From assembly GCA_002269645.1 (NCBI GenBank), contig NIVC01000576.1:124001-188000 (forward strand): DNA of 64,000 nucleotides, read 5' to 3'. A program made the position numbers and the translations under genes. The notes under the pieces are model-generated. The model saw nothing but the letters and a program-made list of their open reading frames with translations. It ran no database searches and was not told where the DNA came from. This stretch comes from Macrostomum lignano (lineage: Eukaryota). Below are positions 1 to 56,581 of this stretch, piece by piece (the first letter of the stretch is position 1; every line of letters starts with the position of its first letter).

Positions 1-214
1 TAGCTTATTTAAGCCTTTTTTCTCAAGTGCTCGTGAATTATGCATACTGATCGTTAGGGAATTTTTTTGTTTTAATCGCTAAACAGAAAATTTAATCACA
101 TTTTGAACTTCTGAAGCCGTGTTTTTAAAGACTCCAAACTTTTCTCCGAAGTTTGATCCTTGTATGGTGGCTGGGTGGGTCTTACAATTTTAATGTGGAT
201 CTTAATTCGGTTTC

Positions 215-28400: not shown

Positions 28401-30144
28401 GTGTCCTAAGCCTGACTGCATGTACCTGCACGAACTTGGCGATCCCAATGCCAGTTTTACTAAAGAAGAAATGAACGCCGGCAAGCACAACGAGTTTGAG
28501 GAGCGATTGGTGCAGCAATTTCTTAGTAATCAAAAGAAAAGCTCAGCCAATCATAATCAGAAGCAGGCGGCCAATGCTGCCGCTGCAGCCTCCGGGACGT
28601 CATCATCCGGAGCTGGCGCTGCCGCTTCTGGTGGCGGCGGCGGCGGCGGCGGCGGCGCTACTTCAAGCAAATCCAGCAAGAAAGCTTCGAAAAAAGCAGC
28701 CGCTGCCGCCGCGGCAGCGGCAGCCTCTGGCGGTTCAAATGGCGGCGAGAAAGCTGGCAAGCAGCAGCAGCAAGCTCCTCATCCACAGCCTAGGCACGTT
28801 TCCAGCAGTACTCAGGACACTTCTCAGGCTCATAGGCATCAGCAACAGCAGAGCCAGCGAACCAGAGGAGAATCACCAGTGTCAGCAGGTTCCACAGCTA
28901 TAGCTCCCCCTTCTTCATCATCAGTAACATCGTCTGTTGCGGTGGTTTCTGAATCAGCTACTACTGTTAGTAGTTCTATGCAGCACCTTCCCCATCAGAT
29001 ATTTGGCGGTATTGGCGGCGGCTTGGGCGGCTATTCGTTCAATGGCGCAGCCTCTTTGGGGTCGATCGTTCCAGCGCCGCTGCCTTCGTCACACGCGGCT
29101 TCGCCAGCATCGCCAAAGCATCTGTCTCTGGCGCCGGCTCCTCCGCCACCTTCAACCAGTCTGGCTGTGGGATCCGGCTCGGCTGCTCCGGGCTCTTCAT
29201 CATCTCCATCATCATTGAGAGTAGGGGCTACAGCAGCGCCGGCACCAGCAACAGCTTTCTCTTGCGACGATTTGGACTTTGATCCGTTTAGCGAGTCGCA
29301 GAGGGGATTAAGCGAGTGCCTGCAGTACGAGCAGCAGCAGAAGGCTATGCACCAGCAGCATCATCAGGCCCCGCCTGGCTTTTATCAGCATCATCAGCCT
29401 GGCCTGTCCTCACCGCAGCACCAGAATCATCTTCAGCAGCAGCACCAGCAGGTTAGTCGGGTTTCAGCGTCCACCTCAACATTGGCACCGCCGCCGGGGT
29501 TATTTCATCTTCAGCAGCAGCAGCAACAGCCATCGCTAGAAACTGATGTTCGTCATTTAGCGCAGACGTTGAGAAGTTTATTCCCCAATGCTAATATTAG
29601 CTACGAGGGTCAGGCAGCTTCTAATAATCAAAGCGCTCTGTTCGCTCCCGGCGCCGGCTCGCCAGCTTCAGCGGCGCCAACTTCAATGTTTGGCTACATC
29701 GGGTCCGGCCGGCCGCCCCAGTCTCTATCGTCTGCTGTTGGCGGCGGGCACCGATTCGTGCCCAGTGCCAGTTCGCCAATGTCTGGCACTGGCGTGATTT
29801 CCTCGCCAGTTGCCGCTTCTAAAGCGTCGGCGCTAAATCCGCTGCCGCCGCCTGGTCTCTGGTCGGACCCGGCCATCGTGTCTAGCCATCAGAGGCTTCA
29901 GCAGGAACAGCAGCAACAACAACAGCAGCAATTATTTGGCGGTAGCAGCAGCAGCGGCAGCAGTTTCTACAGCAGCAATGGCGGTGGCGGAGGCGTGTTC
30001 GGCGGCAGTCGCCTGTTTGGCGGTCTGGGCGGCGACCCAGTTTGGCCCCGTCTGTCGCCATTCACAATCGACGACCAGTCGTCTCAACAGCAGCAGCAGC
30101 AGCCGTCAACAGAGCATGCCGCCAGTTTTTTTAGAACCGCTTGA
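22409..30144 (+). CDS. CNOT4: CCR4-NOT subunit 4, RING E3 ligase, 787 aa
   Basis: Exons 22409-22501, 22586-22651, 22739-22788, 27990-30144 (phase-consistent). C4C4 RING CPLCMEPL...CPCEYQICRFCW...CPACR; RRM starting VRVVQHNLVFVIGL; C3H1 finger TTKYCSSYLKGHTCPKPDCMYLHE; long low-complexity tail. An in-frame ATG at 22400 is an alternative start. Confidence 0.93.
22930..27815. repeat. Intronic satellite, 42-bp unit made of two 21-bp subunits (gagatttctgatctaaatcac / gagattcagaatcttaatcgt), about 4.9 kb
   Basis: More than 100 tandem units filling CNOT4 intron 3 (22789-27989). Confidence 0.98.
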
Positions 30145-33217: not shown

Positions 33218-36200
33218 TCAACGCTTCTTAACCAGCAGACAGGTCTCAACGTCACCCTTGCCTTTGACATAGGTAGTGCCGCGGTCTTCGAACTCGTAGC
33301 GAGACTCCAGCTTCTTCGCTACATCTTTGGTCACCTGTGTGAATGCGCCATATTACTGAATTTCTCATTTATGAATAATAGCATGTTGCTTTTGCTAATG
33401 AGGGCCGAAAACTCCATGGCAGCACCACAGAAACTAGAATAACTAAATGGGCCACTCATCACATTTGCGTATAAGCTACTTTCAGTTCAGTAGTAAGTTA
33501 AACCGAAGCATTTTCATTCATTTTCAAAGCCACGGCTCATTTATTGGCTCTTACCCACCAGCCTAAACCCTCCAACCGCGCCTTTCCACTCTACCCCCCG
33601 CCCCGCCCAAATTTTTATTGCCTTTCTCGGCATTCCAGCCTAAAGCTGCCTATGTACATTTCAGTGGACTGGCCAATGTACATTATGGCTGAACCAATTA
33701 GCAAGCTGTTTACGCCTGCAAGCTTGTGTGGGCTTCTAAACTTATCAAATTCATTACAACTGCCATATATGCCCGAGTGGCCCATCTAGTTATTTTAGAA
33801 CCTACAAAATTACAAAGTTACAAACAAATGCGTTTACGCACCTGAATACGCATCATCTCCCCAGTGGAGTACATACGCGAGCTGACATTAACCGTGTCGC
33901 CCCAGATGTCGTACAGCAGCTTAGTGGACCCGATAACGCCGGCCGTGACCTCGCCAATGTTATAGCCGATCTTTAATTTGAAATCGAAATTGAACAGGGC
34001 CTCATTGAATTCTTTAGTCTGTTCCAGCACGTCCAAGCAGAAGTCCATCAGGGCATACAGGTGATCCCAGTCCGGGTCTTTGTTTTTCTTCCGGGTCTTC
34101 GTGTTTAGCCCAGAGGCGGCCATGAGACAAGCGCCGACTGTTTTGATCTTCTCCACATCCTTATAATCGTCGTTGCTAAGCAGACCCTCGATGTCTGAGA
34201 AGTATTCGTTGAGCACGCGCAGCATCTCAGTGCCGCCTTGGAACTGTTCATCGTAGAATTCGCTAAAATTATAAATAGTTGAGAATACGACGCCAACGTT
34301 CTTCAAATTTCTGGAGTAGGTCTTCTTCTCTGACATCTCCGTCTCGATGTAGTAAGGAATGATGTTGTGCAGCAGCCAGTCAGCCTGCTCCTTCTCCTTT
34401 CTCATCTGCACCTTCTCCTGCGCCGCCTGATGCTCGCAGTGGAACGACTGCCTAAACGATATGTCGTATAGCCGATTGAGAAACACTACTAATAGTAGCA
34501 GTTCCAGCACACTGATTGTGAACTCGCCCTGCCTGATCAGCTCCGCAGGGTTGGTGGCGTTCCTTGACAGCGTTAAATTGCCGGCCGCCTCCGGCTTGGT
34601 GCTGCACAAGCTTGGGTTAAGAAAGGTCAACGCGATGGCGAGAATGACGGCTACGATGGCTGTGCAAGACTTGGTCCACGAGCAGAAGAATGTGAACAGA
34701 ACGAAGGCGCACAGGGCTAAGAGGAACACTTCGCGTAGAGTGACGGATTTGTCCACGATGGCTGGGGCACAGCTGGCCAAGTTGGCGATGGCCACAGCGG
34801 CTGGGGCCACCTGCGGATCAGGGGTAGAGAGCGACGTGTATTGGGCTTGTTGGTTGCTAGGGGAGACTGTTGCGGTTGCTAGGGGAAGATTGTTGCAGTT
34901 GCTAGGGGGAGATTGTTGCAGTTGCTAGGGGGAGATTGTTACAGTTGCTAGTGCAAGATTGTTGCGGTTGCTAGGAGAAGATTGTTCCAGTTGCTAGGGG
35001 AAGATTGTTGCAGTTACTAGGGGAAGATTGTTGCAGTTACTAGGGGAAGATTGTTGCGGTTGCTAGGGGAAGACTGTTGCAGTTACTAGGGGAAGATTGT
35101 TGCAGTTACTAGGGGAAGATTGTTGCAGTTACTAGGGGAAGATTGTTGCAGTTGCTAGTGAAAGATTTTTGCGGTTCCTAAGCCAGGGAGACATTGTTAC
35201 GGTTTTTAGGGGAAGATTGTTGCAGTTACTAGGGGAAGATTGTTGCAGTTGCTAGTGAAAGATTTTTGCGGTTCCTAAGCCAGGGAGACATTGTTACGGT
35301 TTTTAGGGGAAGATTGTTGCGGTTCCTAGGCCAAAAAGGATATTGCTGCGGTTGCTAGGGGGAAGATTTTTGCATTTGCTAGGGGAAAGATTGTTTCGGT
35401 TCCTAAGCCAGGGAGACATTGTTGCGGTTGCTAGACAAGATTGTTGCGGTTCGTAGGCCAAAAAGGACACTGCTGCGATTGCTAGGGGAGACTGTTGTGC
35501 TTCCTAGCTGATATTTGTGGTTGCTATATTGTTGCAGTTGCTACGGGGCTTTGGGGGAGAGTTTTTCAGTTGCTAGGCGATACGGGTAACTCATATAGCC
35601 TCATACTAACCATTACAAAGGCACCAATAGCATTGCGCGGATACCACGAGAACAGGCCGGCGTACAGGCCGCTGGCGCAGTTGCTGCACAGGTCGAAGCA
35701 AAACATCAGCAGGAATAGAATAAGGACCACGGCGCCAATGCAGCCCAGAGCGATGCCTGTTCAAGTAAAATTGAGAGGGCGATGTCAGCCAATAGACGAA
35801 ACGCAAATAGACTAAATAAATGAATGTGACCGTTTCGAATTGTACGTTTCATCTATCGCAGATTCTATCACAGAACTTTTCGTTCCTGCCTTTCTCCTTC
35901 ATTTACCCTTTCCCCTTCTTCCCTTCATCTCTTCTCCCTCCTTCATTCCCCTTCTTCCCTTCATCTCTTCTCCCTCCTTCATTCCCCTTCTTCCCTTCAT
36001 CTCTTCTCCCTCCTTCATTCCCCTTCTTCCCTTCATCTCTTCTCCCTCCTTCATTCCCCTTCTTCCCTTCATCTCTTCTCCCTCCTTCATTCCCCTTCTT
36101 CCCTTCATCTCTTCTCCCTCCTTCATTCCCCTTCTTCCCTTCATCTCTTCTCCCTCCTTCATTCCCCTTCTTCCCTTCATCTCTTCTCCCTCCTTCATTC

Positions 36201-44000: not shown

Positions 44001-47000
44001 GGAGAGGCAAGGGAGAAGAGGAGAGGGAAGGGAGGAAAGGAAAGAGGAGGAAAGGAGAGAGGAGAGGAGGAGAGGAGAGGCAAGGGAGAAGAGGAGAGGG
44101 AAGGGAGGAGAGGATTATAGGATAACGGGCACACAACCGGGGGATAAAAAACAACATGCTAAACAACCCATTACTACAGACGGTCACAGACCACATGGGC
44201 GTATGCGGCAAGCACTGGCCACCGAGCGCCCCAATGATCAAGAGACGCCGTCTAGAGAGGCCGAAACATCCTCCATCAGTTTTTATAACTGAGTATTCAA
44301 AGGAGTCAAACAGTTGTGGAGCCTGTAAGTCTAGCATATTTAAGCATCATTTATTCCACAAAATAAATTATAAATCCTGTTGGCTCAGAAAACATTTTCA
44401 AGCATAGAAACACGATACTAGAAAGAGCTGGAGAAAGAAAATATAGGCAGTTGCAGCTGCAAATTAGGCTTAAGAAATTCCCGGACTTAAGAGCCCGCGT
44501 TTTGCTTAATATACTGAATCAGTCATCCAAGGACAGGAAGTGTGTGACCATGGACGCCTGTCAGGATAGAAATCTGGATTTGAAACTGGGGCATTTTTCT
44601 GGATTAGGTTTAGTCAATAGAATCTTTTCCAAGCCTGAAAAATGGAGACTTCACCCCGCTAAATCGCTGTGGCACATTTTCAAATTCTTTTTATAAATTA
44701 TTAACTGACTATAAGTTTATCGATAGGACTGAAATATTGGAAACCAGAAAGCACAGAGTCAGTCGAGTCACTTTCACAAGCTTGAATCTTCACAAACTCG
44801 AATCTTCACAAGCTCGAATCTTCACAAACTCAAATCTTCACAATCTCGAATCTTCACAAACTCGAAGCTCCACAAGCTCGAATCTTCACAAGCTCGAAGC
44901 TTCACAAGTTCGAATCTTCACAAACTCGAAGCTCTACAAACTCGAATCTTTACAAGTTCGAATCTTCACAAGCTTGAAGCTCCACAAGTTCGAATCTTCC
45001 CAAGCTTGAAGCTCCACAAGTTCGAATCTTCCCAAGCTTGAAGCTCCACAAGTTCGAATCTTCCCAAGCTTGAAGCTCCACAAGTTCGAATCTTCCCAAG
45101 CTTGAACCTCCACAAGTTCGAATCTTCCCAAGCTTGAAGCTCCACAAGTTCGAATCTTCCCAAGCTTGAAGCTCCACAAGTTCGAATCTTCCCAAGCTTG
45201 AAGCTCCACAAGTTCGAATCTTCCCAAGCTTGAAGCTCCACAAGTTCGAATCTTCCCAAGCTTGAAGCTCCACAAGCTCGAATCTTCCCAAGCTTGAAGC
45301 TCCACAAGTTCGAATCTTCACAAACTCGAATCATCACAAACTCGAAGCTCTACAAGCTCAAAATTTCAAAAGCTCGAAACTCCACAAGCTCGAATCTTCC
45401 CAAGCTTGAATCTCCACAACCTCGAATCCTCACAAGCTCGAAAATTCAAACCGTCAAAGTTTAAGCTGAATAAACTTTGACTTTTGACTTAATAAAGTTT
45501 AAGAAACACAAACAGATAAATATTTGCGCCTTCCATTCCAGATTCCGTTTTTTAAAAAGTCCCTGAAACGTGACAGAGAATGAATGGGAGGGGAGAGTAG
45601 CGGAACAAGGAGCGAAAATACGGCTGGTTGGTCGTAAATTCTTTCAGCCCTCAGGGGTCCTCCCTAGAGGAGCACCAAAAGTGCACAACAGTCTGTGCCG
45701 GAGGTTGGAAAATCCGATTTCGCCCCGGGAAGGCAGAAAAGCCGAACTACTGAGAGAGAAAGTTGGTAGGGAGCGAATGCCAGGACCAATATATTCAGTC
45801 TCCGCAGGTTCTGCCTGAAGGCTAATATTAATCTGGCAGACTTTGTACTAGCTTAGCAGTAAAGCATTTTTCACGCTCTCTGGCGTGCGCGAGAGGTTCA
45901 TAAATATAGGCACAGATGCTGCAGGCTAATATTGCAACACATGCTTAGAGGATTTATATTTTAATTAAATAATTATAAACTGTGATGCAACTATTAAGGT
46001 CTTGGTAGCGGTTAGCTAAAAATAACTCACATTTTTTCTCTACTCCTCACCTCCTTTTCCTTACTCACCCCCTCTCTCTATCTTCCTCTCCCTCTCATCC
46101 CTCTCTTCCTCTCCCTCTCATCCCTCTCTTCCTCTCCTTCTCATCCCTCTCTTCCTCTCCCTCTCATCCCTCTCTTCCTCTCCCTCTCATCCCTCTCTTC
46201 CTCTCCCTCTCATCCCTCTCTTCCTCACCCTCTCATCCCTCTCTTCCCTCTCTCCCTCTCATCCCTCTCTTCCTCTCCCTCTCATCCCTCTCTTCCTCTC
46301 CCTCTCATCCCTCTCTTCCTCTCCCTCTCATCCCTCTCTTCCTCTCCCTCTCATCCCTCTCTTCCTCTCCCTCTCATCTCTCTCTTCCTCTCCCTCTCAT
46401 CCCTCTCTTCCTTTCCCTCTCATCCCTCTCTTCCTCTCCCTCTCATCCCTCTCTTCCTCTCCCTCTCATCCCTCTCTTCCTCTCCCTCTCATCCCTCTCT
46501 TCCTCTCCCTCTCATCCCTCTCTTCCTCTCCCTCTCATCCCTCTCTTCCTCTCCCTCTCATCCCTCTCTTTCTCTCCCTCTCATCCCTCTCTTCCTCTCC
46601 CTCTCATCCCTCTCTTCCTCTCCCTCTCATCCCTCTCTTCCTCTCCCTCTCATCCCTCTCTTCCTCTCCCTCTCATCCCTCTCTTCCTCTCCCTCTCATC
46701 CCTCTCTTTCTCTCCCTCTCATCTTCCTCTCCCGCTCATCCCTCTCTTCCTCTCCCTCTCATCCCTCTCTTCCTCTCCCTCTCATCCCTCTCTTTCTCTC
46801 CCTCTCATCCCTCTCTTCCTCTCCCTCTCATCCCTCTTCCTCTCCCTCTTAACACTTCCTCTCCCCCGCACCCGTGTAGTTTACTCCTCCAATTCTTGCC
46901 ATTGCTACTAAGCGATATATATTAATTGCCGCCACTGCCTAAGACATTAGCACTCAATCAGCAACTTATTTAGTGCAATTCCTACTGTGTCCTTAAAATC

Positions 47001-49514
47001 GACTCGTGCCCAAGCCAAACGTTGGGTGAAGTAATTGATAGATTTCATACAGGAATCAAGCGTGGCCCAGCTGAAGGACAACACGAGTCAAGGACTAAGA
47101 GAGACAGACAGAAAAGACAGAATTTCTCTCTTTTTAGACAGAAAGGCAGATTGAAAGGCAGATCTGCTGACCGTGTCCCCAACACACAATTGTCTATACT
47201 TATAAGCTTGCAAGCCCAAGTCCACACACTGTCTGTGAGTACACAGATGATTAACTATGCATTATTCAGTTTGTGCGATGCTCTCTGTACAAGATGTGTA
47301 TTCTTGTATACACAACTAGTGACCTCAGCTCTTATTATTAATTTATCAGGGTACAATGCAATCTGGATAACAGGATTGGCATCAACACTTAGTTAAGTAG
47401 AAATCAATGATGATGAAATAAACTCAATAATGTATTCTATAATATTAATTAAACAATATAAAGTGGAAAAAGCAACTATCTTCTTCAAATAAAAACTCCC
47501 ACACGCAGAAAAACTTATATTGTGAGCAAAAGGACTTCTATATAGACACACTGGCCTCCAATATATATAGACACACTGGCCCTCAATATACTCGTATATA
47601 GACACATTGGCCTCCAATTTACATAGACACACTGGCCTTCAATATATATAGACACACTGGCCTACAATATATATAGACACACTGGCCTTCAATATCTATA
47701 GACACACTGGCCTACAATATCTATAGATACACTGGCCTCCAATATATATAGACACACTGGCCTTCAATATATATAGACACACTGGCCTACAATATCTATA
47801 GATACACTGGCCTCCAATATATATAGACACACTGGCCTTCAATATCTATAGATACACTGGCCTTCAATATCTATAGACACACTGACAGCCTGACATCCAA
47901 TATCAATAGAATACACTGGCCCTCAATATCTATAGACACAGTAGCACTTACCCTAGACACAACCTCCCTGTATAGTACATAGTAAATGCAAACTACAGTC
48001 GCAGAACTCTCATCAGTCAGTTTAAATTTACAGAATTAAAACTCACCTGCGACATAATGTGCAACTGAAATCCAACAATTTGCACTCCAATTAGCATCAT
48101 AGCGTGAGAAGTTAGAATCAGTGGCGTCTCAACTCCAATGAAGAACACTAGGCAGAGTATGTACAAGCCGCTCAGCAGTATGCCGTAAAGAAGGCAAAGG
48201 TACAAGGGTATTGGTATCAGGGTGTACGATACCATTACCACCTGTTGGAGTTGAAATCGCAAGTTAAAAGGTTGAATTTTTTTCGAATATAGATAGCTCT
48301 TGCGAGAGGAAATCCTTTTCGTCTTTCCAAGGCCATTCCAAGAGAAAATTCCATTTGTTTTCAAGGTCATTTAAATGGAAAATTTAAGGTCATTTAAGTG
48401 ATTTAAAGGTCATTGTAAATTAAAAATCCATTTGTGTTCAAGGTCATTCTAAACGGAAGCCTAATGGTTTCGAGGTCATTCTAAATGGAAAGCTAATTGT
48501 TTTCAAGGTCATTTAAATCGGAAACCCATTTGTTTTATTTTTCAAGGTCATTCTAAATGGAAGCCTAATGGTTTTCAAGGTCATCCTAAATAGACATATA
48601 TTTGTTTTTAAGGGCATTTAAATGGAAAATGTGATTTAAAGGTCATTTTAAATTAAAAATCCATTTGTGTTCAAGGTCATTCTAAATGGAAGCCCATTTG
48701 TTTTCAAGGTCATTCTAAACGGAAGCCCATTTGTTTTCAAGGTCATTCTAAACGGAAGCCTAATGGTTTTCAAGGTCCTTCTAAATGGAAATCTAATTGT
48801 TTTCAAGGTCATTTAAATCGGAAACCCATTTGTTTTCAAGGTCATTCTAAATGGAAGCCTAATGGTTTTCAAGGTCATTCTAAATAGACATCTATTTGTT
48901 TTCAAGGGCATTCCTCGTCTTCACGGTAATAATGAATGGAGATTGCAATCGTCTGTCATAGACTGTAAGTCTATGTCCAGCCTCACCTGTAAAACTCCGG
49001 CAAAATCGAAAATCGGCAAATATCCATAGTCCTCATCGCCTTTCAAAGCGGCCATATTGGCCAGTAGTAGGCCGCCTTTAACCACCACGGCAATCAGCGA
49101 CAATACAAGAGAAAATCGCGGAAATAGCGCTCGAACGTAAGTAGCTCCAAGTAGTAGGACAAAGACGAGAATAGTAGCGACCTCAGTTAGCACCAAACCC
49201 CACCACATTGGAGTTTGGCGAATAGCAAAATAGATAACCCAGACCAGAGAGCACAGGGCCAGGTAGGCGCAGGCACATCTCAGCCTGCCCACCGACTGCT
49301 GGTAGCTGATTCTCTGATAGTGAGCCTCCAGCACGCTCGATGCAAAGCAGGGATTCAAAACCGAACCAGAGGAACGATCGAATAGTGTCAGTCGGCGTCC
49401 TTGACGGCCACCGCCGCCTTCTACTCGACGTTTTCCGCTAATTGGATCGATGTCCACTTCCTCGGTGTCTTTAGTAAACTTGGCCTTCTCGCTTGGCCCG
49501 GCCTCGTCAGCCAT
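33218..49514 (-). CDS. ADCY9: Transmembrane adenylyl cyclase, type 9-like, 1034 aa
   Basis: Exons 49514-48987, 48241-48047, 42167-41639, 41284-41105, 38622-38561, 38488-38435, 37641-37317, 35756-35611, 34810-33842, 33334-33218; all GT-AG, 3105 nt, phase-consistent. Two 6-TM clusters. C1: [12 protein letters not shown]...[10 protein letters not shown]....[21 protein letters not shown]2: VEKIKTVG and [17 protein letters not shown], the AC9-type signature. Orthology is inferred from these motifs. Confidence 0.88.
34850..35560. repeat. Minisatellite, about 22-23 bp unit (aggggaagattgttgcagttact)
   Basis: About 30 diverging copies filling the intron between AC exons 8 and 9. Confidence 0.93.
35885..37295. 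repeat. Pyrimidine-rich minisatellite (36-bp unit grading into a 20-21-bp unit)
   Basis: ccccttcttcccttcatctcttctccctccttcatt, then cccccttctccctccttcatt; fills the intron between AC exons 7 and 8. Confidence 0.95.
37745..38400. repeat. Minisatellite, 20-bp unit (gactcactgacctactgatt)
   Basis: About 30 copies in the intron between AC exons 6 and 7. Confidence 0.93.
39120..39535. repeat. (GACA)n-type compound microsatellite
   Basis: Read directly. Confidence 0.93.
40212..40280. repeat. (CT)n microsatellite
   Basis: Read directly. Confidence 0.95.
40662..41100 (-). mobile_element. (CAGA)n-embedded dispersed element, copy 2, inverted relative to copy 1
   Basis: Core at 40776-40875 with microsatellite on both sides; it abuts the AC exon 4 donor at 41104. 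Confidence 0.75.
42975..44112. repeat. Purine-rich minisatellite, 15-bp unit (ggagagggaaagaga)
   Basis: About 70 units, almost pure A/G. Confidence 0.96.
44130..44290 (+). mobile_element. Possible THAP-like zinc-finger fragment (DNA transposon remnant)
   Basis: [16 protein letters not shown]...RPKHPPSVF resembles the C-terminal half of THAP (VC..H[FW]...P..F). The N-terminal CxxxC is not visible. Confidence 0.4.
44775..45440. repeat. Minisatellite, 32-bp unit of two 16-bp subunits (aagcttgaagctccac / aagttcgaatcttccc)
   Basis: Homogeneous 32-mer core at about 44970-45300; 16-mer-type degenerate flanks. Confidence 0.95.
46080..46850. repeat. Pyrimidine-rich minisatellite, 23-bp unit (atccctctcttcctctccctctc)
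   Basis: About 33 near-identical copies. Confidence 0.96.
47540..47940. repeat. Minisatellite, about 25-bp unit (gacacactggcctccaatatatata)
   Basis: About 15 copies. Confidence 0.92.
48345..48915. repeat. Minisatellite, about 33-bp unit built on ttcaaggtcatt
   Basis: About 18 units filling most of AC intron 1. Confidence 0.92.
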
Positions 49515-50831
49515 TGCAGCTGGTTTTAGCAGAGTGGGCGCCGATTTAAAGAGATTCGATAATGCCAGTAAGGGAGGGTGAGTATGGGGGGGGCCAAGTG
49601 TGCAGGTGACAGGTTTCTCACACTACAAGTTCCACGTTCAAGATTTAAGCACAGTATTTCTGCAAATTGGGCCAATACAGCAAGGTGAGGTGGCTTGCTT
49701 GAAAATTCATATATAATAATAATTTCTTCAATTACTTGACATGTGCATGGCCTATGGCTGGCAGTTCAGATAGACTTATTAAGCATTTTATTCTTAGCAT
49801 ATGAAACAAGCATGTAGTAGATAAGAAAAAAGGAAGCATCAAGTTCAATCATGCATAGATGATTTCTTGCTATTAAATTAATCCTTATTGATTATTATTT
49901 AAGATTTACAATAAGCTATGCTTGTGCTTAATCAACTCTGCTTTTACAAGTGGATATGTAATTAGGCCAGATATGCAATTAATAGTTTAGCTACAGTTAT
50001 TGAGTAGTGCATAGGAAGGCTGCATATGGCTGTTTAGTCTAGGGACTATAGGGTGCCCATATATCCTCAATTATCCTAGCTAATATTGTTACCCATTTTA
50101 TAGTTAGGTGAACTAAAGCAATGTAGAGTAAATTACTGTGAAATGTCTTGCTCAAGGACATAAATTGTTCTAATAGAATTGGGAATTGAACCTTCAATCT
50201 TCTTCTTTAATCTTTATTAAATTATTGCTTTGTTTTTGTATCAATAAACTGATTAGATAATTTCTTTGATATATTATACTATATACTTTAAAAATAATTT
50301 TATTTTTAATTATAAAGAAAAAAGAAGGGGTTAGCTTTTTCTTTCTAGAAAACCTATAATTAAAGACCTATAAAAATACAATTAAGATATTTTTTTCTAA
50401 AATATAGACATAAACTTTTTGTCTTTTTGCCCCTAATGATTTATCATCTAAATCAAAAAATTAAATTATAAAAACCCCTAAACTAAATTACTTATATATT
50501 CTAGAAAAAGAAAAATGGAAAAAAGTTGTTTTAATAAAGTAAAAGTAAAATACTTCCTATAATCACTCTTTAGTTATTCAATAATATATTGTATTCATTT
50601 CAATCTAAACCTTAAGTTTTGTCTAAGATGCATACATAATTGGTATTTTTAATTATATTTTTCAATGTTCTTATTCTTAGAAAAAAGCTATAGATGCCTC
50701 AGTTTGCATTAAGGCGCACCAATGACCAATTTGCAAACAAGCTTTAGTTACCCTATGAGGCTCTACTAGAGGGTATACTTTTGCAACAACAACAACAACA
50801 AAATACGCTGTCATGATGGTAAAAGTCAGCG

Positions 50832-53800
50832 TCACAGGGCGCGCTTCATGGCTTGGGCGCGAACAAAGGCCGCGCCACCGGCAGTGTCCGGGGCGCCGGC
50901 GTCAGCCAGCAGACAGTCGACATAACGCCGAGTTCGCGCTTGACCTCGCCGGTAGGGTGCCTGCAGCGTGAGCAGCAGCACCTCCTGCACCGGCTGTGGG
51001 CAGTACGACTCGGCGCGGATGAGATGGCCTGCGAGCTGGAGTCGCCGACGGCGCAGTAGATCACTTGGACGTGGCAGGCCAGCGCGGCGATAGAGTGCCG
51101 CGTTGGTGACTCGCTCGACGCCGATGTTGAAGGCGGCGCGCAGCAGACCAGCGTGCGCCGCATCGACTTGCTGTTCGAGTGAGTCCGTCAGCGTCCAGGT
51201 CTCGGCGTTGTACAGCAGGACGGTCTCGATTACCGCCTGGAACAGCGCCGCCCTCTGGCGGTCCGGTAGGGCCTCGGACTGCAGGACTGCCCTCACAGAA
51301 CGAAAGGCAGCCCAGGCAAGCCCGCGGCGGCGTCGCAGGTCCTCGCGAGCGTCTGGAACCAGACCGCCGAGGTAGACGAACTGCTGACATCGCGGGAGTT
51401 CGGTCGCCTGCCCGTCAGCGCCTCGGCAAAATATTGCAGCCTCGATGTCGTCCGGCACGCAGAGCACAACGGTCTTCTGCGTGTTGACCACCAGGCCGAC
51501 ACTCGCCGCAACGGCAACCAGCCTGTCCAGCTGCCGTTGGGCGCCCTCGACGGTCGAGGACAGCAGGGCGAGGTCGTCGGCGTAGCCAAGCACGCTGAGC
51601 CGCTTCTCCGGTTGACGTCGACCCACGCGTCGCTGCAGCAGAAAACCGTCGTCGTCGGTAGGAAGAGCAGTCCGCAGCACCCAGTCAAGCACCAGGACGA
51701 ACAGAAACGGCGCCAGCGTATCTCCCTGAAGCACTCCGGAGGATGTCTCAAAGGAGTCCGATAGGCCGTCCGGTGTTGTCACAGCAGCTGTCGTATCACG
51801 GTACATCGCCATGACGGCGGAGATCAGCTGCTCAGGCACGTTGTACGCGCGGAGCACCATTGGAAGCACGGCTCTGACAACCGAGTCGAATGCCTTCTTG
51901 AAATCAATAAAGATTAAAATCAGTATCGACTGACGAATCCGCGCCTCCTCGATGACTCGGCGAAGAGCCAGGATCTGCGCCACTGTGCCGCGATGGGGCC
52001 GGAACCCGTTCTGCTCTGGGCGCAGGTACGGATCCAGCACGGGCTGCAACCGCGAAAGCAGCATCCGGTTGAACAGCTTCGCTGCACAGGACTGAAGGCA
52101 GATGCCTCGATGGTCTTCAAGCCTAGTGGTGCCCGGCTTCTTTGGAACAGCGACGATGTGCGCCGTGGTCCTTTCGTTGGGCGCCGCCTCACCGAAGAGC
52201 ACGCGGTTCATCACTCTGGCGACCTCAGCGGCCACACAGGGGATGCGCAGCGCCTCGATGGGCACCTCGTCCGGACCCAGCGCTTTCCCGCCCGGTGACT
52301 GCTGGGCGAGCTTGACAACGTCGGCTGCGTTGACTGGGGCTACGCTGAAACTCTCCTCTGCCGGCAGCGGCGTCTCCGGCGGCAGCGTCAGACTGTCTGG
52401 CAGCGGGGGTGGCGGCGCGTTGACGATGGCGGCGAAGAACTCGCGCAGCTCGTTCCTACGCTCGTCCGGCGTGTCACCAGCCAGGTTCAGCGGATTGCGC
52501 CGCTTTCGTCCCGTCAGAGCGTTGATGGCGGACCAGGCCACGCGCCCTCTGGCATCGGGCCCAGCGGCAGAGACAGCCTGAATGGCGTCATCGACAGCCG
52601 CTTGTTGGCGCTGCAGGTAGACAGCTGCCAGAGCTGCCTCTGCCTCGCGGGTTGGTCGCCTGCTCAAGCGGAGCTTCTCCAGATCTTCCCTCGCTGCCTG
52701 AATCGCGGGGTCGTCCTGCCAGACCGGCTGCCCACGTTGAGCCGGCTGCATCATCGGGACTGCTTGCTCCGCGGCGGTTCTGATTGCAGCGCACACTTCC
52801 GCATACTCGGCACTTCCACGCTTGTCGCCCAGCGCGGTGTTAAAGGCGCTAGCAAAGCGACGCTGCGTATCGGTGGCTCTGAGCGCGCGGTAGTAGCGCC
52901 GCGGTGGCCGCTTCGGCGGACGGTAGAGCGGATCGCGAAGGTTGAGGTCGCAGATGAGGAGCCGGTGATCGGACCGCAGAGCCAGCGGCGTGATGGTGCG
53001 GCAGTTGACGGCGCGACGACGCTCACGGAAACGCACGAGCACGTGGTCGAGCTGTGCTTGTCTCCGGGTTGCGTTCCTGCCACGCGCGTTCCGTCGCCTC
53101 CGCTTGCAGCCCACGAAGGTTGCGAGACCGCTCAGTGGCTTGCGGAAGCGGGTGTTGGCCGACACCATGTCCTGCCTCTCCAGGAAGTCCTCTAGTGCCT
53201 CGGTGTTGTTGTTCCCGCGTGGCGTCACGAACAGCGACCTCTCGGACCTACGCAGGACTGCGTTCAGGTCTCCGAGGGCGACCGCTGTGTCACGCTGCGC
53301 CGTCGCCTCTACCTGCACTGAGAGCTGCTCGAAAAACTCTTGAGCCTCGTCAGGGCGTGTGGCAGGGGGCGCGTACGCGCAGAACAGGCGAGCATTCCGA
53401 CCGCGTAGCCGGACGTCGATCCGAAGCAACCGGGGGGACAGGGAGATGCAGCGACAGCTCTGCTGCAGCCTCGGCCCGATCAGCGCTCCAACTCCTCCAC
53501 GGCCTCGCTGGTCCGCAGAAGTATAGTAGAGGGTCCACCCGGCGCCCAAGTCCTCACAATGAAGTCCCGGGTCGGCCTTGATAGACACCTCCTGCAGCGA
53601 GATGATGTCGCAGCTCAGGTCGTACGCCAGCTTCGCCAGCACCCCTCTACGCCAAGCAGCCTTGAGAGTGCGGCAGTTCAGCGTCCCGACCCGAAGCATG
53701 CCCTGTGGTACGGCTGGGGCTCGATGCAGTTGAGCCTCACGGTCCCCGGCGCCACCCGGAGGATCCGAGTGGACCCGCGCGGCAGCTCGACGGGCGGCGC

Positions 53801-53945
53801 CACGCAGCCGGCCTCGTCGGTTCCGCTCACGCCGGCGCTCAACACGCCGACGGGCGCTCCGCTGCCCTCGCTTGGTCCTGCCGCATTTGGCCGCCGCAGC
53901 AGTTAAGCGCGGCTCTCCGCTCTGACCACGAGGAGGTAGCGGCAT
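50832..53945 (-). CDS. APE endonuclease plus reverse transcriptase ORF, 1037 aa, uninterrupted
   Basis: APE: VGTLNCRTL, ISLQEV, LGDLNA, LDHVLV, SDHRLL. RT: EQNGFRPHR, IDFKKAFDSV, GVLQGDTLAPFLF, YADDLAL, FVYLG. C-terminal RRRLQLAGHLIR typical of RTE. Confidence 0.95.
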   Translation of the reverse strand: MPLPPRGQSGEPRLTAAAAKCGRTKRGQRSARRRVERRRERNRRGRLRGAARRAAARVHSDPPGGAGDREAQLHRAPAVPQGMLRVGTLNCRTLKAAWRRGVLAKLAYDLSCDIISLQEVSIKADPGLHCEDLGAGWTLYYTSADQRGRGGVGALIGPRLQQSCRCISLSPRLLRIDVRLRGRNARLFCAYAPPATRPDEAQEFFEQLSVQVEATAQRDTAVALGDLNAVLRRSERSLFVTPRGNNNTEALEDFLERQDMVSANTRFRKPLSGLATFVGCKRRRRNARGRNATRRQAQLDHVLVRFRERRRAVNCRTITPLALRSDHRLLICDLNLRDPLYRPPKRPPRRYYRALRATDTQRRFASAFNTALGDKRGSAEYAEVCAAIRTAAEQAVPMMQPAQRGQPVWQDDPAIQAAREDLEKLRLSRRPTREAEAALAAVYLQRQQAAVDDAIQAVSAAGPDARGRVAWSAINALTGRKRRNPLNLAGDTPDERRNELREFFAAIVNAPPPPLPDSLTLPPETPLPAEESFSVAPVNAADVVKLAQQSPGGKALGPDEVPIEALRIPCVAAEVARVMNRVLFGEAAPNERTTAHIVAVPKKPGTTRLEDHRGICLQSCAAKLFNRMLLSRLQPVLDPYLRPEQNGFRPHRGTVAQILALRRVIEEARIRQSILILIFIDFKKAFDSVVRAVLPMVLRAYNVPEQLISAVMAMYRDTTAAVTTPDGLSDSFETSSGVLQGDTLAPFLFVLVLDWVLRTALPTDDDGFLLQRRVGRRQPEKRLSVLGYADDLALLSSTVEGAQRQLDRLVAVAASVGLVVNTQKTVVLCVPDDIEAAIFCRGADGQATELPRCQQFVYLGGLVPDAREDLRRRRGLAWAAFRSVRAVLQSEALPDRQRAALFQAVIETVLLYNAETWTLTDSLEQQVDAAHAGLLRAAFNIGVERVTNAALYRRAGLPRPSDLLRRRRLQLAGHLIRAESYCPQPVQEVLLLTLQAPYRRGQARTRRYVDCLLADAGAPDTAGGAAFVRAQAMKRAL

Positions 53946-53964
53946 TTATCTGCACCGTGGTGCA
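53879..53964 (-). ncRNA. Candidate HDV-like self-cleaving ribozyme core (5' strand of P1 missing in this copy)
   Basis: P2 UGCCGC/GCGGCA; P3 ACC/GGU; L3 UCCUCGU; GG for P1.1; P4 GCCGC(GC)/(GC)U-GCGGC; J4/2 G-C-C-A-A. Folded by hand only. Confidence 0.6.
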
Positions 53965-55027
53965 AATAAATTAAGACTGCAAATAAATTAAGACTGCAAA
54001 TAAATTAAGACTAAATAAGATAAATTAAGTATACTTTTGCACTTTTGTAAATAAATGGTATTTGTGGGGAATGTGCATTATATTCTTTCTATTCTTTTGT
54101 TTACAATAGCCCTCCTCTTCTACTTGCTAAGGGTTTTTATACCTTGGTTTGAGCATTAGCTCTTGCATTCTCACTCTTGTTCTCTATTTAGCTATAGTCA
54201 TTTTAAAAATTAAATTAATACAAATAGGTCTATAAGTATAAGTATTAAATTATAAGATAATTATAGCTTATAATATGAATAAAAAAGTAATATACTAATT
54301 ATTAATTAAAAAACATAACATAAAACCATACTTAGACTAAATTGTATAATAAATACAAAGTGCACCTAATAAATGATTAAAAAGTTTAAAGTTATATTAA
54401 TTGATGACATACATACTCATAGCCTAGCCTACAGGCCTATCATATCAAATTAGGTCTAGTTACGAGCAAGTAAAACACATTGAAGCTGTGTCAAGTGGTT
54501 TTTTTATAAAACCATTCTGGGTACAGAACACCATACAGCAGCAACAGCCCAGGGACGGGTAGTCGTTTATGTTGTAGACAACTGACAACACTAGTCACTA
54601 GCTACTGTGGTGCATGTAAATGAAATAAGCTTTTAAACAGACATATAGAATTAACCATACAAGAATTTTTTTAAAAATATGTAGGTTTTTTCCTTGTAAT
54701 TTAGTCAGATAGTAATTAGCTAAGCTAAGATTAAGAATTGATTTTCGATAAAATCGTAAAAGTGCCTTGATTTTAAACGATTAAAAGTTCCATGACGCTA
54801 ATACAAATGTGAAAATGTTTATTTTTTCGTTTTTAATAAAATGCAACTGCTTTAATAATTAATGTTTTAAAAAAAGAAACAAAACAAAAAACAATATGCA
54901 TCACAAATTACCTTTAAAGAAAAGTTTCTACTTTGTTTTACCCAGCATTCATGCTTTTATTTGAACAAAAGTATTTCAGCATAATTTTAAAACGTGTATT
55001 AGTTATGAAATTATAAATAACTCTCCA

Positions 55028-56581
55028 ATGTTACTCCAATGTTTTAATCTTTACAACATTATAAACCAGTCCATCTACAACAAAAATGAACTCTTTATCG
55101 GTTTTGTTGACTATGAAAAAGCCTTCGATAGCTTAAATCAACCGACCCTTTGGCACAAAATGGATAACCAAGGTATTAAAGGTCAAATGACAGAACTTAT
55201 CAAGAACATGCATAAAAATGCCTGTTTCATTCTAAAGAAAGATGATGATGATGATGAAACCCAGCCAATCCCAATATCTAAAGGTGTTCTTCAAGGTAAC
55301 CCTCTCTCTACCATCCTTTTTGAACTATATATTGACGACATTGTTGAATATCTTGAACTCTCTAGCGCTAGGCGCTCTCTTACGAGATCTGCTTTCCCAC
55401 TCATCCTGCTCTTTGCGGACGATCAAGCCATTCTAGCTAAAAACAAAGATGAACTTCAAGACACATTTACAACTATGGAAAATTACTGCAAGCAAAACTA
55501 CTTGAAAGTTAATGCAAGCAAAACAAAGTTTATGCAGGGCAGTACCAGACAAAAAAATGACACAGAAAGTTTTGCTACAAAAATAATCTACGACAACCAA
55601 GAAATAGAGGAAGTAAATGAATTTAAATACCTGGGAATTATTTTTGAACCAAAAAACAGCTTTAAAAAATGTATTGAACATCAAACTAAGCAGGGTTATT
55701 CAGCTATGTTTTCCCTACTCCACAAGGTAAAAAATACGTCCCTGGACATCACACTCATTCGCAGACTATTCGACGCGCTTGTCACCCCCGTTATCACGTA
55801 CGGCTGTGAGCTCTGGGGCCCTCTGGCTACCATTTCTGAAACAAAAGCTATTGATAACATTCAGCTGAAATTCTACAAATATCTCCTCAATCTACCAAAA
55901 TTTGCTAGCAACAGTGTGATATCATCAGAACTTGAGCTTACTCCAATCTCCCAACGAATTGCTAAAACCTATCTTACCTACTGGCTGAAGATTAGACATC
56001 AAAAACTTTGCCAAACGACACTAGAAATTTTCTACTCAAACACCAGCCAAAAAAATCCATGGAAAACAAATATACTAAAGAAACTGGAAAGTATAGACTT
56101 AAAAGCACTAACTGAAGATAAACTTTCCCAAAGCTTTAATAACGAGAAATACCTAGTGAAAAAGCACCTCAAGATACACAGAGAAAGAGAACTTAGCCAA
56201 AAGCTAGAGAATCAGCAACATATTAAACTCTATAAAAACGCCTATCTCTACAAAAAAATCTGCAGGCCTGACCTTTCAGATTACTTTCCATGCACTTTTA
56301 GAAACAAAAAATTCCTAACAACCCTCCTAAAACTGAAATGCGAAATTACACCCAACATTTTCTCTCATGAACCATGTAGACTGTGTGGAGCGAGAAATGG
56401 TTCCGATATCCTACACTACTTGACCGAATGTCCACAAACCGAAAAGTTCAGAAAAAAATACTTCTGTCAGTACCTCCTAAATGACAAGCAAGTACACAAG
56501 TTAGGATATGCTACAAATGAAAAAAGAGTCAGAAAAGAGCTCACTGGTGTAGCTAAAATATATGAAGTCATGAATAGCTAA
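55028..56581 (+). CDS. Non-LTR reverse transcriptase C-terminal part, 517 aa
   Basis: FVDYEKAFDSL, KGVLQGNPLSTILF, LLFADDQAIL, FKYLGI, YGCELWG, and a C-terminal CxxC...HxxxxC (CRLCG...LHYLTEC). Confidence 0.9.
   Translation: MLLQCFNLYNIINQSIYNKNELFIGFVDYEKAFDSLNQPTLWHKMDNQGIKGQMTELIKNMHKNACFILKKDDDDDETQPIPISKGVLQGNPLSTILFELYIDDIVEYLELSSARRSLTRSAFPLILLFADDQAILAKNKDELQDTFTTMENYCKQNYLKVNASKTKFMQGSTRQKNDTESFATKIIYDNQEIEEVNEFKYLGIIFEPKNSFKKCIEHQTKQGYSAMFSLLHKVKNTSLDITLIRRLFDALVTPVITYGCELWGPLATISETKAIDNIQLKFYKYLLNLPKFASNSVISSELELTPISQRIAKTYLTYWLKIRHQKLCQTTLEIFYSNTSQKNPWKTNILKKLESIDLKALTEDKLSQSFNNEKYLVKKHLKIHRERELSQKLENQQHIKLYKNAYLYKKICRPDLSDYFPCTFRNKKFLTTLLKLKCEITPNIFSHEPCRLCGARNGSDILHYLTECPQTEKFRKKYFCQYLLNDKQVHKLGYATNEKRVRKELTGVAKIYEVMNS

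What the first reader, a model, noticed from the sequence alone, without database searches (positions are those of the whole stretch)
53879..53964. HDV-like ribozyme core overlapping the first codons of an intact RTE-like retrotransposon ORF
Seen: the minus strand from 53944 to 53879 reads UGCCGC-U-ACC-UCCUCGU-GGU-CAGAGC-GG-AGA-GCCGCGC-UUAACU-GCUGCGGC-GG-C-CAA-AU-GCGGCA. This gives P2 (UGCCGC/GCGGCA), P3 (ACC/GGU), L3 UCCUCGU, GG for P1.1, a P4 hairpin and a J4/2 with a candidate catalytic C at 53890. A perfect UGCAC/GUGCA hairpin just upstream could be a J1/2 insert. The ORF's first ATG (53945) runs into P2 and the frame stays open through the whole fold, so the segment would be RNA structure and coding sequence at once. 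Established: antigenomic HDV has ACC-UCCUCGC-GGU at P3/L3, and HDV-like ribozymes sit at the 5' ends of R2, RTE and L1Tc elements, where they cut the element RNA out of host transcripts. Inference: this family uses that strategy. The 5' strand of P1 (expected GCUCUG, partner of CAGAGC) is absent here, so this copy may code an active protein but be unable to self-cleave. One P2 position next to P3 is imperfect.
Basis: partly seen in the sequence, partly recalled or inferred. Interest (0 to 1): 0.82.

Follow-up and report, generated by a model that had tools for sequence, protein, structure and literature searches.

The report
HDV-like ribozyme heading an RTE-like retrotransposon
The first ~100 nt of an intact RTE-like retrotransposon fold as a hepatitis-delta-like self-cleaving ribozyme that also holds the start codon, a known strategy shown here for an uncatalogued family, but in this copy the helix that defines the cut site barely pairs.

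Summary
Minus strand 53944-53879 carries P2, P3, a canonical 7-nt L3 (UCCUCGU), the two P1.1 G's, P4 and a J4/2 with C53890, all inside the reading frame that opens at ATG 53945.

Rfam gives a sub-threshold match to drz-agam-1 (28.8 bits, gathering 37). The stronger evidence is comparative. Seven related elements from metagenome contigs (53-75% protein identity) keep the same nested double pseudoknot, with compensatory changes in P1, P2, P3 and the J1/2 hairpin. They also keep invariant UCC in L3, GG, and the J4/2 pattern G-C-N-A-A.

It pairs perfectly (6 bp, four different sequences) in four relatives. In the window it reads GUCUUA against CAGAGC, with 2 Watson-Crick pairs, 2 G·U and 2 C/A mismatches (-0.8 kcal/mol). 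This copy therefore probably cleaves poorly or not at all.

- A 12-bp target-site duplication fixes the element at 54028-50785.
- The P1 strand plus the hairpin's 5' arm form a 17-nt unit repeated in tandem in four family members.
- The relatives carry an extra covarying helix inside L3.

Verdict: a real new member of a known kind, with some unusual traits.

The parts
50785..54028 (-). Whole retrotransposon copy, 3244 bp and about 65% GC, in flanks of about 25-30% GC
   Evidence: It is bounded by the 12-bp direct repeat GCAAAAGTATAC, read. GC profile.
54029..54040 (-). Target-site duplication, 5' copy (GCAAAAGTATAC)
   Evidence: Sequence read. Identical to 50784-50773.
50773..50784 (-). Target-site duplication, 3' copy. 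Its first G is shared with the last TTG of the tail.
   Evidence: Sequence read.
50784..50801 (-). 3' tail, (TTG)6
   Evidence: TRF. Relatives end in (TTG)n or (ATT)n.
50832..53945 (-). Single intact ORF of 1037 aa with an AP-endonuclease domain and a reverse transcriptase domain
53961..54028 (-). 5' tandem array. There are three exact 17-nt units GTCTTAATTTATTTGCA (54011-53995, 53994-53978, 53977-53961), preceded by two partial or degenerate units (54028-54012). Each unit is a P1 5' strand plus the 5' arm of P1.2.
   Evidence: TRF gives 3.1 copies at 100% match. The array lies inside the TSD. Homologous arrays occur in L002, L003 and L090.
53972..53977 (-). Candidate P1 5' strand GUCUUA, with predicted cleavage 5' of G53977. 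Against CAGAGC it gives G-C, U·G, C×A, U·G, U-A, A×C.
   Evidence: The position is homologous to the perfect 6-bp P1 strands of L003, L085, L086 and L090. Duplex energy is -0.8 kcal/mol.
53945..53970 (-). J1/2 hairpin (P1.2): 11 bp with loop CACG. The A of the AUG is its last paired base.
   Evidence: It covaries across 8 members.
53943..53945 (-). Start codon at the P1.2/P2 junction
   Evidence: An AUG sits at this position in 6 of 8 members. It opens the full ORF in 4 of them.
53939..53944 (-). P2 5' strand UGCCGC
   Evidence: It pairs with 53884-53879. Compensatory GUUGGC/GCCAAC in L002 and G·U in L090.
53925..53937 (-). P3 (ACC/GGU) and the 7-nt L3 UCCUCGU. C53933 and C53932 are the P1.1 partners.
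   Evidence: P3 covaries as ACC/GGU, GCC/GGC, GUC/GAC and GCC/GGU. UCC is invariant.
53919..53924 (-). P1 3' strand CAGAGC
   Evidence: It lies between P3 and the invariant GG in all members.
53917..53918 (-). GG of P1.1
   Evidence: Invariant in 8 of 8.
53893..53913 (-). P4 hairpin GCCGCGC-UUAACU-GCUGCGGC
   Evidence: The stem base GCCGC/GCGGC is invariant, and the upper pairs covary.
53885..53892 (-). J4/2, GGCCAAAU. C53890 is the candidate catalytic C.
   Evidence: The pattern N-G-C-N-A-A is conserved in all 8 members. It matches C75-N-A77-A78 of the HDV ribozyme (own knowledge).
53879..53884 (-). P2 3' strand GCGGCA

Best explanation
Window 54028-50785 (minus strand) is one target-site-duplicated, coding-intact copy of an RTE-like non-LTR retrotransposon. 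Its family carries an HDV-like self-cleaving ribozyme as the first ~100-140 nt of the element.

Layout: P1 5' strand | structured J1/2 hairpin (P1.2) | AUG | P2 | P3-L3 | P1 3' strand | GG (P1.1) | P4 | J4/2 with the catalytic C | P2 3' strand. The ORF starts at the P1.2/P2 junction and reads through the whole catalytic core, so the first ~22 codons are constrained by both the RNA fold and the protein.

Inferred mechanism, by analogy with R2, L1Tc, and mosquito RTE elements:
- The element is transcribed by read-through, or from its own 5' repeats.
- The ribozyme cuts 5' of the G that starts P1. This leaves a 5'-OH element RNA that still holds the complete ribozyme.
- That RNA serves as the template for target-primed reverse transcription, and perhaps as a cap-independent aid to translation.

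In this particular copy the core is canonical, but P1 is nearly unpaired. Self-cleavage at G53977 is therefore probably weak or lost. This fits the fact that the inserted copy retains several upstream repeat units.

Shown: the sequence, the fold conservation and covariation, the element boundaries and the ORF. Inferred: catalysis, the cleavage site, and the roles in processing and translation.
For: Sequence and ORF.

Rfam: drz-agam-1 match covering all 82 model positions, E=0.0013 in the local scan.

Family 5' ends, read:
- P1 is a perfect 6 bp in four relatives, with four different sequences: GUGCCA/UGGCAC, GAGCCA/UGGCUC, GUUCCU/AGGGAC and GUGUUG/CAACAC.
- In each of those four it is the only 6/6 complement in all available upstream sequence, and it lies 0-3 nt from the hairpin.

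Pair counts: 92.3% paired against 36-45% when slid. 14 pairs have changes on both sides, reached by 0 of 500 shuffles. P1 covaries at 5 of 6 pairs, P2 at 3 of 5 and P3 at 2 of 3. P1.1, UCC, GG and the J4/2 C are invariant.

RNAalifold recovers P2, which was not imposed on the model, together with P1.2, P3 and P4.

In L085 and L086, similarity to the other members ends exactly at the P1 G. An AUG sits at the P1.2/P2 junction in 6 of 8 members. The TSD places the array and ribozyme inside the element.

Literature:
- HDV-like ribozymes sit at RTE 5' ends and cleave at the element junction (PMC3774820, PMC6765202).
- A J1/2 helix accelerates drz-Agam-2-1 (PMC4908430).
Against: - No cleavage assay has been done.
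- The Rfam score is below the gathering threshold, and no Rfam model detects the seven relatives.
- The window P1 has only 2 Watson-Crick and 2 G·U pairs out of 6 (-0.8 kcal/mol). L002 (4 bp) and L084 are also poor.
- Only 8 sequences were available, 7 of them from unverified metagenome contigs.
- The alignment used for pair counts was fitted to a model that included P1, P1.2, P3 and P4.
- Part of the sequence conservation (GEPR, AAAAK) could reflect protein constraint.
- The nested MFE fold of the window RNA prefers an alternative pairing, CCGCU/AGCGG, over P2.
Confidence: 0.82

Rival explanations
1. This copy is still an active ribozyme. It would use the weak GUCUU/AGAGC helix, whose two mismatches are both C/A and so each one transition away from a pair, or a P1 strand from an upstream 17-nt unit. 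The strong P1.2 hairpin would help by clamping P1 and P2 together.
For: The core is fully canonical. The P1.2 hairpin has 11 bp, and such a helix accelerates drz-Agam-2-1 by up to ~1000-fold (PMC4908430). Three identical copies of the strand are available. The element is young: intact ORF and an exact 12-bp TSD.
Against: The P1 duplex is -0.8 kcal/mol, against -5.4 to -8.7 in the four good members. All three units are identical, so none pairs better. The inserted copy kept more than 3 units upstream of the proximal site, so its template RNA was not cut there.
Confidence: 0.2
2. The conserved 5' fold is not, or is no longer, catalytic in this family. It would instead serve as a structured 5' element for translation initiation, for binding the element's own protein, or at the DNA level as a promoter. 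The HDV-like appearance would be vestigial.
For: Relatives have an extra helix in L3 and an A where HDV has the metal-binding G. A G-to-A change at that L3 position abolished cleavage in a Nasonia R2 ribozyme (PMC3774820). No Rfam HDV-like model detects the relatives. HDV-like ribozymes have been proposed to act like IRESes (PMC6765202).
Against: P1 covaries strongly, and it matters only for defining a cleavage site within a double pseudoknot. UCC, GG and the J4/2 C-N-A-A are invariant. Element homology starts exactly at the P1 G in L085 and L086.
Confidence: 0.1
3. The resemblance is chance, or a by-product of coding. Pro-Pro-Arg-Gly and Gly-Glu-Pro-Arg...Ala-Ala-Ala-Ala-Lys codons happen to be self-complementary in a GC-rich gene.
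For: The region is 62% GC and coding. The Rfam hit is below threshold. The same 20-base core pattern occurs 19 times by chance in GC-rich bacterial genomes.
Against: Those bacterial matches do not score with the family model at the motif sites. The P1 5' strand and the 5' arm of P1.2 are non-coding, yet they covary with coding partners. P2 and P3 show compensatory double changes.
Confidence: 0.03

Closest known systems
drz-Agam-1 (Rfam RF01787), Anopheles gambiae HDV-like ribozyme
   Same: The P3-L3 core ACCUCCUCGUGGU is identical. The order P2-P3-L3-P1'-GG-P4-J4/2-P2' is the same, and the match covers the full model length.
   Different: The score of 28.8 is below the gathering score of 37. 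P2 is shorter. The Rfam alignment places P1 in what is really the P1.2 3' arm. Here the ribozyme lies inside an ORF at the 5' end of an RTE-like element.
drz-Agam-2 family: HDV-like ribozymes at the 5' ends of mosquito RTE retrotransposons (Ruminski et al. 2011, cited in PMC6765202 and PMC3774820; PMC4908430)
   Same: It is an HDV-like ribozyme at the extreme 5' end of an RTE-type element, with cleavage at the element's first nucleotide. A stable helix in J1/2 (P1.2) brings P1 and P2 together.
   Different: The sequence family is different and no Rfam hit links the two. Here the AUG is fixed at the P1.2/P2 junction, a 17-nt tandem array repeats the P1 strand, and the relatives have a helix in L3. 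I could not read the 2011 paper (not held), so the start-codon positions of the mosquito elements were not compared.
R2 element ribozymes (Eickbush & Eickbush; PMC3774820)
   Same: It is an HDV-like fold at the 5' end with highly conserved P1.1, P3 and L3. J1/2 is variable and sometimes long. P1 covaries between species. The function is to process the element RNA out of a co-transcript.
   Different: R2 is site-specific in 28S rDNA and uses a restriction-like endonuclease. In many species its P1 5' strand comes from the 28S target. Here the element is APE-type with a TSD, and its P1 strand is internal.
L1Tc Pr77 of Trypanosoma cruzi (PMC6765202, citing Sanchez-Luque et al. 2011)
   Same: The first ~77 nt hold an HDV-like ribozyme at the 5' end of an APE-type non-LTR element. 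A possible parallel is a 5' segment that acts at both the DNA and the RNA level.
   Different: A promoter role for the 17-nt units here is only my conjecture. The clade and sequence are different.
Twister-variant ribozyme of Perere-3, the RTE-clade element of the flatworm Schistosoma mansoni (PMC8501958)
   Same: It is an RTE-clade element with a self-cleaving ribozyme at its 5' end. TSDs lie next to the cleavage site, and the cleaved ribozyme supports downstream translation.
   Different: The ribozyme class is different (twister, not HDV-like). In Perere-3 the P1 5' strand is supplied by the TSD, and the AUG lies about 112-147 nt downstream.

Membership tests
HDV-like self-cleaving ribozyme (nested double pseudoknot) | P1 helix of about 6-7 bp whose first nucleotide (usually G) is the cleavage site, with its 3' strand lying directly after P3 | tested here: inconclusive
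   Window: GUCUUA/CAGAGC gives 4 of 6 positions pairable, only 2 of them Watson-Crick, at -0.8 kcal/mol. There is no better strand within 573 nt upstream. Family: a perfect 6 bp in 4 of 7 members, with four different sequences.
HDV-like self-cleaving ribozyme (nested double pseudoknot) | P2 pairing that crosses P1 and encloses P3, the P1 3' strand and P4 | tested here: met
   UGCCGC/GCGGCA, 6 bp. Compensatory GUUGGC/GCCAAC in L002. RNAalifold recovers it although the model did not impose it.
HDV-like self-cleaving ribozyme (nested double pseudoknot) | 3-bp P3 capped by a ~7-nt L3 that starts UCC and holds a G | tested here: met
   ACC-UCCUCGU-GGU. P3 covaries. Relatives differ: UCC, then an inserted helix, then A.
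HDV-like self-cleaving ribozyme (nested double pseudoknot) | P1.1: two L3 cytosines pair with the GG that follows the P1 3' strand | tested here: met
   C53933/C53932 with G53917/G53918. Invariant in 8 of 8, so there is no covariation to test.
HDV-like self-cleaving ribozyme (nested double pseudoknot) | P4 hairpin, then a J4/2 carrying the catalytic C followed by N-A-A | tested here: met
   P4 is 53913-53893. J4/2 is GGCCAAAU, and G-C-N-A-A is conserved in 8 of 8.
HDV-like self-cleaving ribozyme (nested double pseudoknot) | Site-specific, divalent-ion-dependent self-scission that is abolished by mutating the J4/2 C | not testable with these tools
   This needs an in vitro transcription and cleavage assay.
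Rfam RF01787 drz-agam-1 | Covariance-model score at or above the curated gathering score (37 bits) | tested here: not met
   28.8 bits. There is no hit in the gathering scan.
RTE-clade non-LTR retrotransposon | About 3.2 kb, with a single ORF holding an N-terminal AP endonuclease and a reverse transcriptase, and no ORF1 | tested here: met
   3244 bp between the TSDs. One ORF of 1037 aa with Exo_endo_phos and RVT_1.
RTE-clade non-LTR retrotransposon | Very short 3' UTR ending in a short tandem repeat rather than poly(A), with target-site duplication | tested here: met
   30-nt 3' UTR plus (TTG)6. 12-bp TSD. That this is typical of RTE is own knowledge; compare the reference to RTE-generated microsatellites in PMC6765202.
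RTE-clade non-LTR retrotransposon | Phylogenetic placement of the RT within the RTE clade | not tested
   No reference RT set or tree was made. The nearest named proteins are unannotated Macrostomum lignano predictions.

The most novel reading that the evidence does not exclude
This RTE lineage carries a structurally new sub-type of HDV-like ribozyme and a new 5'-end architecture. It would have three traits.

(a) In most members the two apical L3 nucleotides are replaced by a covarying helix, and the L3 G is an A. Current HDV-like models cannot see this variant.

(b) The P1 substrate strand plus half of P1.2 is amplified as a 17-nt tandem array. The unit junctions (TTTCA|GT) act as initiator-like internal promoters, so each unit is both a transcription start and a ribozyme cleavage site. 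This would let the element rebuild or tune its own 5' end.

(c) The start codon is held at the P1.2/P2 junction, so folding, cleavage and translation initiation are coupled.
Probability: 0.3. Interest if true: 0.65.

Novelty: new member of a known kind. Interest (0 to 1): 0.5.

Why it matters
It adds a comparatively well supported, uncatalogued family to the HDV-like ribozymes that head non-LTR retrotransposons. Its nearest named relatives are in the flatworm Macrostomum lignano and in marine metagenomes.

About 22 codons are read from a catalytic double pseudoknot, which makes this a clear natural case of sequence under both RNA-fold and protein constraint.

The window copy is a natural experiment: a canonical core, an intact ORF and a decayed P1. 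Its relatives raise two testable questions. Does an HDV-like core tolerate a helix in L3? Are the 17-nt repeats that duplicate the substrate strand a promoter, spare cleavage sites, or both?

For annotation, the result shows that current Rfam models miss this family entirely.

Tried and rejected
- Whole-window Rfam gathering scan: nothing found.
- Rfam E-value scan of six relatives: no HDV-like hit.
- Family covariance model R1 over 80 more distant RTE-like metagenome loci (25-45% identity), and over the sister subgroup with a different 5' module (L001, L087-L089, L091; N-terminus MTSSRR, TGACGTCA in the 5' UTR): no further members.
- R1 hit at window 28541-28656 (10.9 bits, E~0.9): treated as noise.
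- Core-motif scan of bacterial/archaeal genomes gave 19 hits in GC-rich genomes. None scored with R1 at the motif, so they are chance. The viral contig scan gave none.
- Alternative P1 partners for the window. No 6/6 site lies within 573 nt upstream. Pairing of the 5' strand with the 'tail' after P2 (GUCUU/AGGAC, seen in the MFE fold) is no better than shuffles across the family, so it is rejected.
- A 'near' P3 with a 4-nt loop in the relatives (for example GUC-UCCG-GAC) fits only 4 of 6 members. The 'far' P3 fits 6 of 6, so the near version is rejected as the main fold.
- L4/repeat-junction complementarity in the window is not conserved and is probably chance.
- TSDs for L085 and L086 could not be identified.
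- Host identification failed: no informative homologues for two neighbouring ORFs.
- Ruminski 2011 and two Lupták reviews are not held in the library.
Full report
**1. The observation**

On the minus strand the layout is:

| Coordinates | Feature | Sequence |
|---|---|---|
| 53945-53943 | start codon | AUG |
| 53944-53939 | P2 5' strand | UGCCGC |
| 53938 | J2/3 | U |
| 53937-53935 | P3 5' strand | ACC |
| 53934-53928 | L3 | UCCUCGU |
| 53927-53925 | P3 3' strand | GGU |
| 53924-53919 | P1 3' strand | CAGAGC |
| 53918-53917 | P1.1 | GG |
| 53916-53914 | linker | AGA |
| 53913-53893 | P4 | GCCGCGC-UUAACU-GCUGCGGC |
| 53892-53885 | J4/2 (C53890) | GGCCAAAU |
| 53884-53879 | P2 3' strand | GCGGCA |

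The ORF from 53945 is open for 1037 aa and has AP-endonuclease and reverse-transcriptase domains. The upstream hairpin is 11 bp, not 5: UUUAUUUGCAC-CACG-GUGCAGAUAAA (53970-53945). The A of the AUG is its last paired base. GCUCUG is absent.

**2. The element**

The copy is about 65% GC in flanks of 25-30% GC. It ends in (TTG)6. I found an exact 12-bp target-site duplication, GCAAAAGTATAC, at 54040-54029 and 50784-50773. The element is therefore 54028-50785, 3244 bp.

Size, a single APE+RT ORF, a 30-nt 3' UTR and a trinucleotide-repeat tail are what is expected of the RTE clade (own knowledge). I did not build a tree.

A second copy, 5'-truncated and decayed (78% nt identity), lies at 210-1217.

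**3. Test of this copy alone**

The Rfam gathering scan of the window finds nothing. A permissive scan of 53600-54300 gives drz-agam-1 (RF01787) over all 82 model positions at 53954-53881(-): 28.8 bits against a gathering score of 37, E=0.0013 for the 701 nt searched. Scaled to the whole window this would be about 0.1. The result is suggestive but not decisive.

**4. Relatives**

A protein search found 30 relatives at 53-79% identity. The only named ones are Macrostomum lignano predictions. The rest come from marine and other metagenome contigs of about element length.

I fetched DNA for twelve of these proteins (13 loci). Seven loci share the window's 5' module: L002, L003, L084, L085, L086, L090 and L093. 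Five others (L001, L087-L089, L091), together with proteins P0011, P0014 and P0015, form a sister group. That group has a different N-terminus (MTSSRR...) and 5' UTR, and no ribozyme signal.

**5. The family fold**

All eight sequences have the same order of parts: P1 5' strand, AU-rich hairpin, P2, P3, UCC..., P3', P1', GG, three nucleotides, P4 (GCCGC...GCGGC), J4/2 (N-G-C-N-A-A-N-N), P2'.

| Member | P1 5' / 3' strands | Pairing |
|---|---|---|
| L003 | GUGCCA / UGGCAC | perfect 6 bp |
| L085 | GAGCCA / UGGCUC | perfect 6 bp |
| L086 | GUUCCU / AGGGAC | perfect 6 bp (one G·U) |
| L090 | GUGUUG / CAACAC | perfect 6 bp |
| L002 | GUCUUA / CUGGAC | 4 bp |
| L084 | GAUUUG / AAGCUC | 4 of 6 positions, no stable duplex |
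| L093 | 5' strand cut off by the contig end | not assessable |
| window | GUCUUA / CAGAGC | 4 of 6 positions, 2 Watson-Crick |

In each of the four perfect cases, this is the only 6/6 complement of the 3' strand in all available upstream sequence.

P3 covaries: ACC/GGU three times, GCC/GGC three times, GCC/GGU once and GUC/GAC once. P2 has a fully compensated variant in L002 (GUUGGC/GCCAAC) and a G·U in L090.

On the model-fitted alignment A3, 92.3% of cells pair, against 36-45% when partners are slid by 1-3 columns. 14 pairs have changes on both sides, and 0 of 500 shuffles reach that number. P1 covaries at 5 of 6 pairs.

There are two caveats. The alignment was fitted to P1, P1.2, P3 and P4, and there are only eight sequences. 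P2 and P1.1 were not part of the model, however, and RNAalifold still returns P2, together with P1.2, P3 and P4.

UCC in L3, the GG, and the C of J4/2 followed by N-A-A are invariant. These are the hallmarks of the HDV active site (own knowledge: U20/C21/C22, G38/G39, C75/A77/A78).

In L085 and L086, similarity to the family stops exactly at the P1 G, and the sequence upstream is unrelated simple DNA. That is expected if the RNA 5' end is the cleavage site.

**6. This copy's P1**

The homologous strand is GUCUUA (53977-53972). Against CAGAGC it gives G-C, U·G, C×A, U·G, U-A, A×C. The predicted energy is -0.8 kcal/mol, against -5.4 to -8.7 for the four good members. No alternative 6/6 site lies within 573 nt upstream.

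Consistent with this, the inserted DNA retains more than three repeat units upstream of the proximal site, so its template RNA was not cut there. Both mismatches are C/A, each one transition from a pair.

**7.

(a) The 17-nt unit. The P1 5' strand plus the 5' arm of the hairpin form a unit, GTCTTAATTTATTTGCA. It is present as three exact and two partial copies inside the TSD. Homologous 17-nt arrays head L002 (at least 9 units), L090 (at least 7) and L003 (at least 1.7). The unit junction reads TTTCA|GT (TTTGCA|GT in the window), which resembles an initiator element (own knowledge). I suggest, without any test, that the units act as an internal promoter, as spare substrate strands, or both.

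(b) The start codon. An AUG sits at the P1.2/P2 junction in 6 of 8 members. It opens the full 1037-1060-aa ORF in the window, L002, L086 and L090. Coding through the ribozyme is thus a family trait and not an accident of this copy.

(c) The L3 helix. All seven relatives have UCC, then a covarying helix, then A, in place of the 7-nt L3. Examples are UGGCGA/UCGUCA, GGACAA/UUGUCC, UGGCC/GGCCA and GGGUG/CACCC. This is why no Rfam model detects them. Only the window copy has the canonical L3. I know of no described HDV-like ribozyme with a helix in L3. A G-to-A change at the corresponding L3 position abolished cleavage in a Nasonia R2 ribozyme (PMC3774820), so the activity of the relatives needs testing.

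**8. Comparison with what is known**

- HDV-like ribozymes at the 5' ends of R2, R4, L1Tc, Baggins, and RTE elements are established. They cleave at the element's first nucleotide and have been proposed to help translation (PMC3774820; PMC6765202, citing Ruminski et al. 2011).
[quoted passage not shown] The conserved hairpin here fits that role.
- In the flatworm Schistosoma mansoni, the RTE-clade element Perere-3 uses a twister variant instead (PMC8501958).

This is therefore a new member of a known kind. Whether the L3 helix and the repeat array make the lineage a genuine structural variant is open.

**9. Verdict**

The kind is already known. Interest is moderate (0.5). It comes mainly from the clean coding/ribozyme overlap, the natural P1-defective copy, the 17-nt array and the L3-helix relatives.

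Noticed in passing
window 210-1217 (+): A second copy of the same retrotransposon family. It is 5'-truncated and decayed, at 78% nt identity to 52653-53680 of the intact copy, with RT fragments in several frames. It has no 5' end, so it gives no ribozyme information.
   Followed up: partly
window 53961-54028 (-); L002 1-144; L090 1-127; L003 1-30: Tandem arrays of a homologous 17-nt unit head four divergent family members. The unit junction TTTCA|GT resembles an initiator motif. The window and L002 share the unit start GUCUUA although it pairs poorly with their different P1 3' strands.
   Followed up: partly
L002, L003, L084, L085, L086, L090, L093 (L3 region, e.g. L090 162-201): All seven relatives carry a covarying helix of roughly 20-40 nt inside L3. 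They also have A where HDV has the L3 G. No Rfam HDV-like model detects them.
   Followed up: partly
L001 600-720, L088 1-110, L087, L091; proteins P0011, P0014, P0015: A sister subgroup of the same RT family (53-66% identity) has a completely different 5' module. It has a long 5' UTR containing TGACGTCA and an N-terminus MTSSRR..., and gives no ribozyme signal. This suggests 5'-module swapping within the family.
   Followed up: partly
window 50785-54028 versus flanks: The intact element is about 65% GC while its flanks are 18-30% GC. The nearest named relatives are in the flatworm Macrostomum lignano, and the others are in marine metagenomes. This is compatible with recent arrival or horizontal transfer, but the host was not identified.
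   Followed up: partly
window 55028-56581 (+): An AT-rich 517-aa ORF with an RVT_1 domain. This is another, unrelated non-LTR-type reverse transcriptase fragment, about 30% identical to metagenome proteins, lying 1 kb from the element.
   Followed up: partly
window 33818-34810 (-) and 48921-49514 (-): Likely host coding sequence. One ORF of 330 aa has an adenylate/guanylate cyclase catalytic domain. A GC-rich 197-aa ORF with hydrophobic segments had no detectable homologues.
   Followed up: partly
window 46000-46900 (+): A pure C/T strand (GC skew -1) made of a tandem repeat of about 32 nt, CCTCTCCCTCTCATCCCTCTCTT....
   Followed up: no
window 27001-27825 (+) and 27967-30144 (+): One ORF has strong coiled-coil-type repeat matches to many Pfam families. 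It is followed by a 725-aa GC-rich ORF with no Pfam match. The weak R1 model hit at 28541-28656 lies inside this GC-rich stretch and looks like noise.
   Followed up: no
window 53901-53908 versus 53972-53981 (-): The L4 loop UUAACUGC is complementary to the repeat junction GCAG(UC)UUAA, as 4+4 bp with a 2-nt bulge. L002 has a 5-bp analogue, but L003 and L090 have none. It is probably chance.
   Followed up: partly
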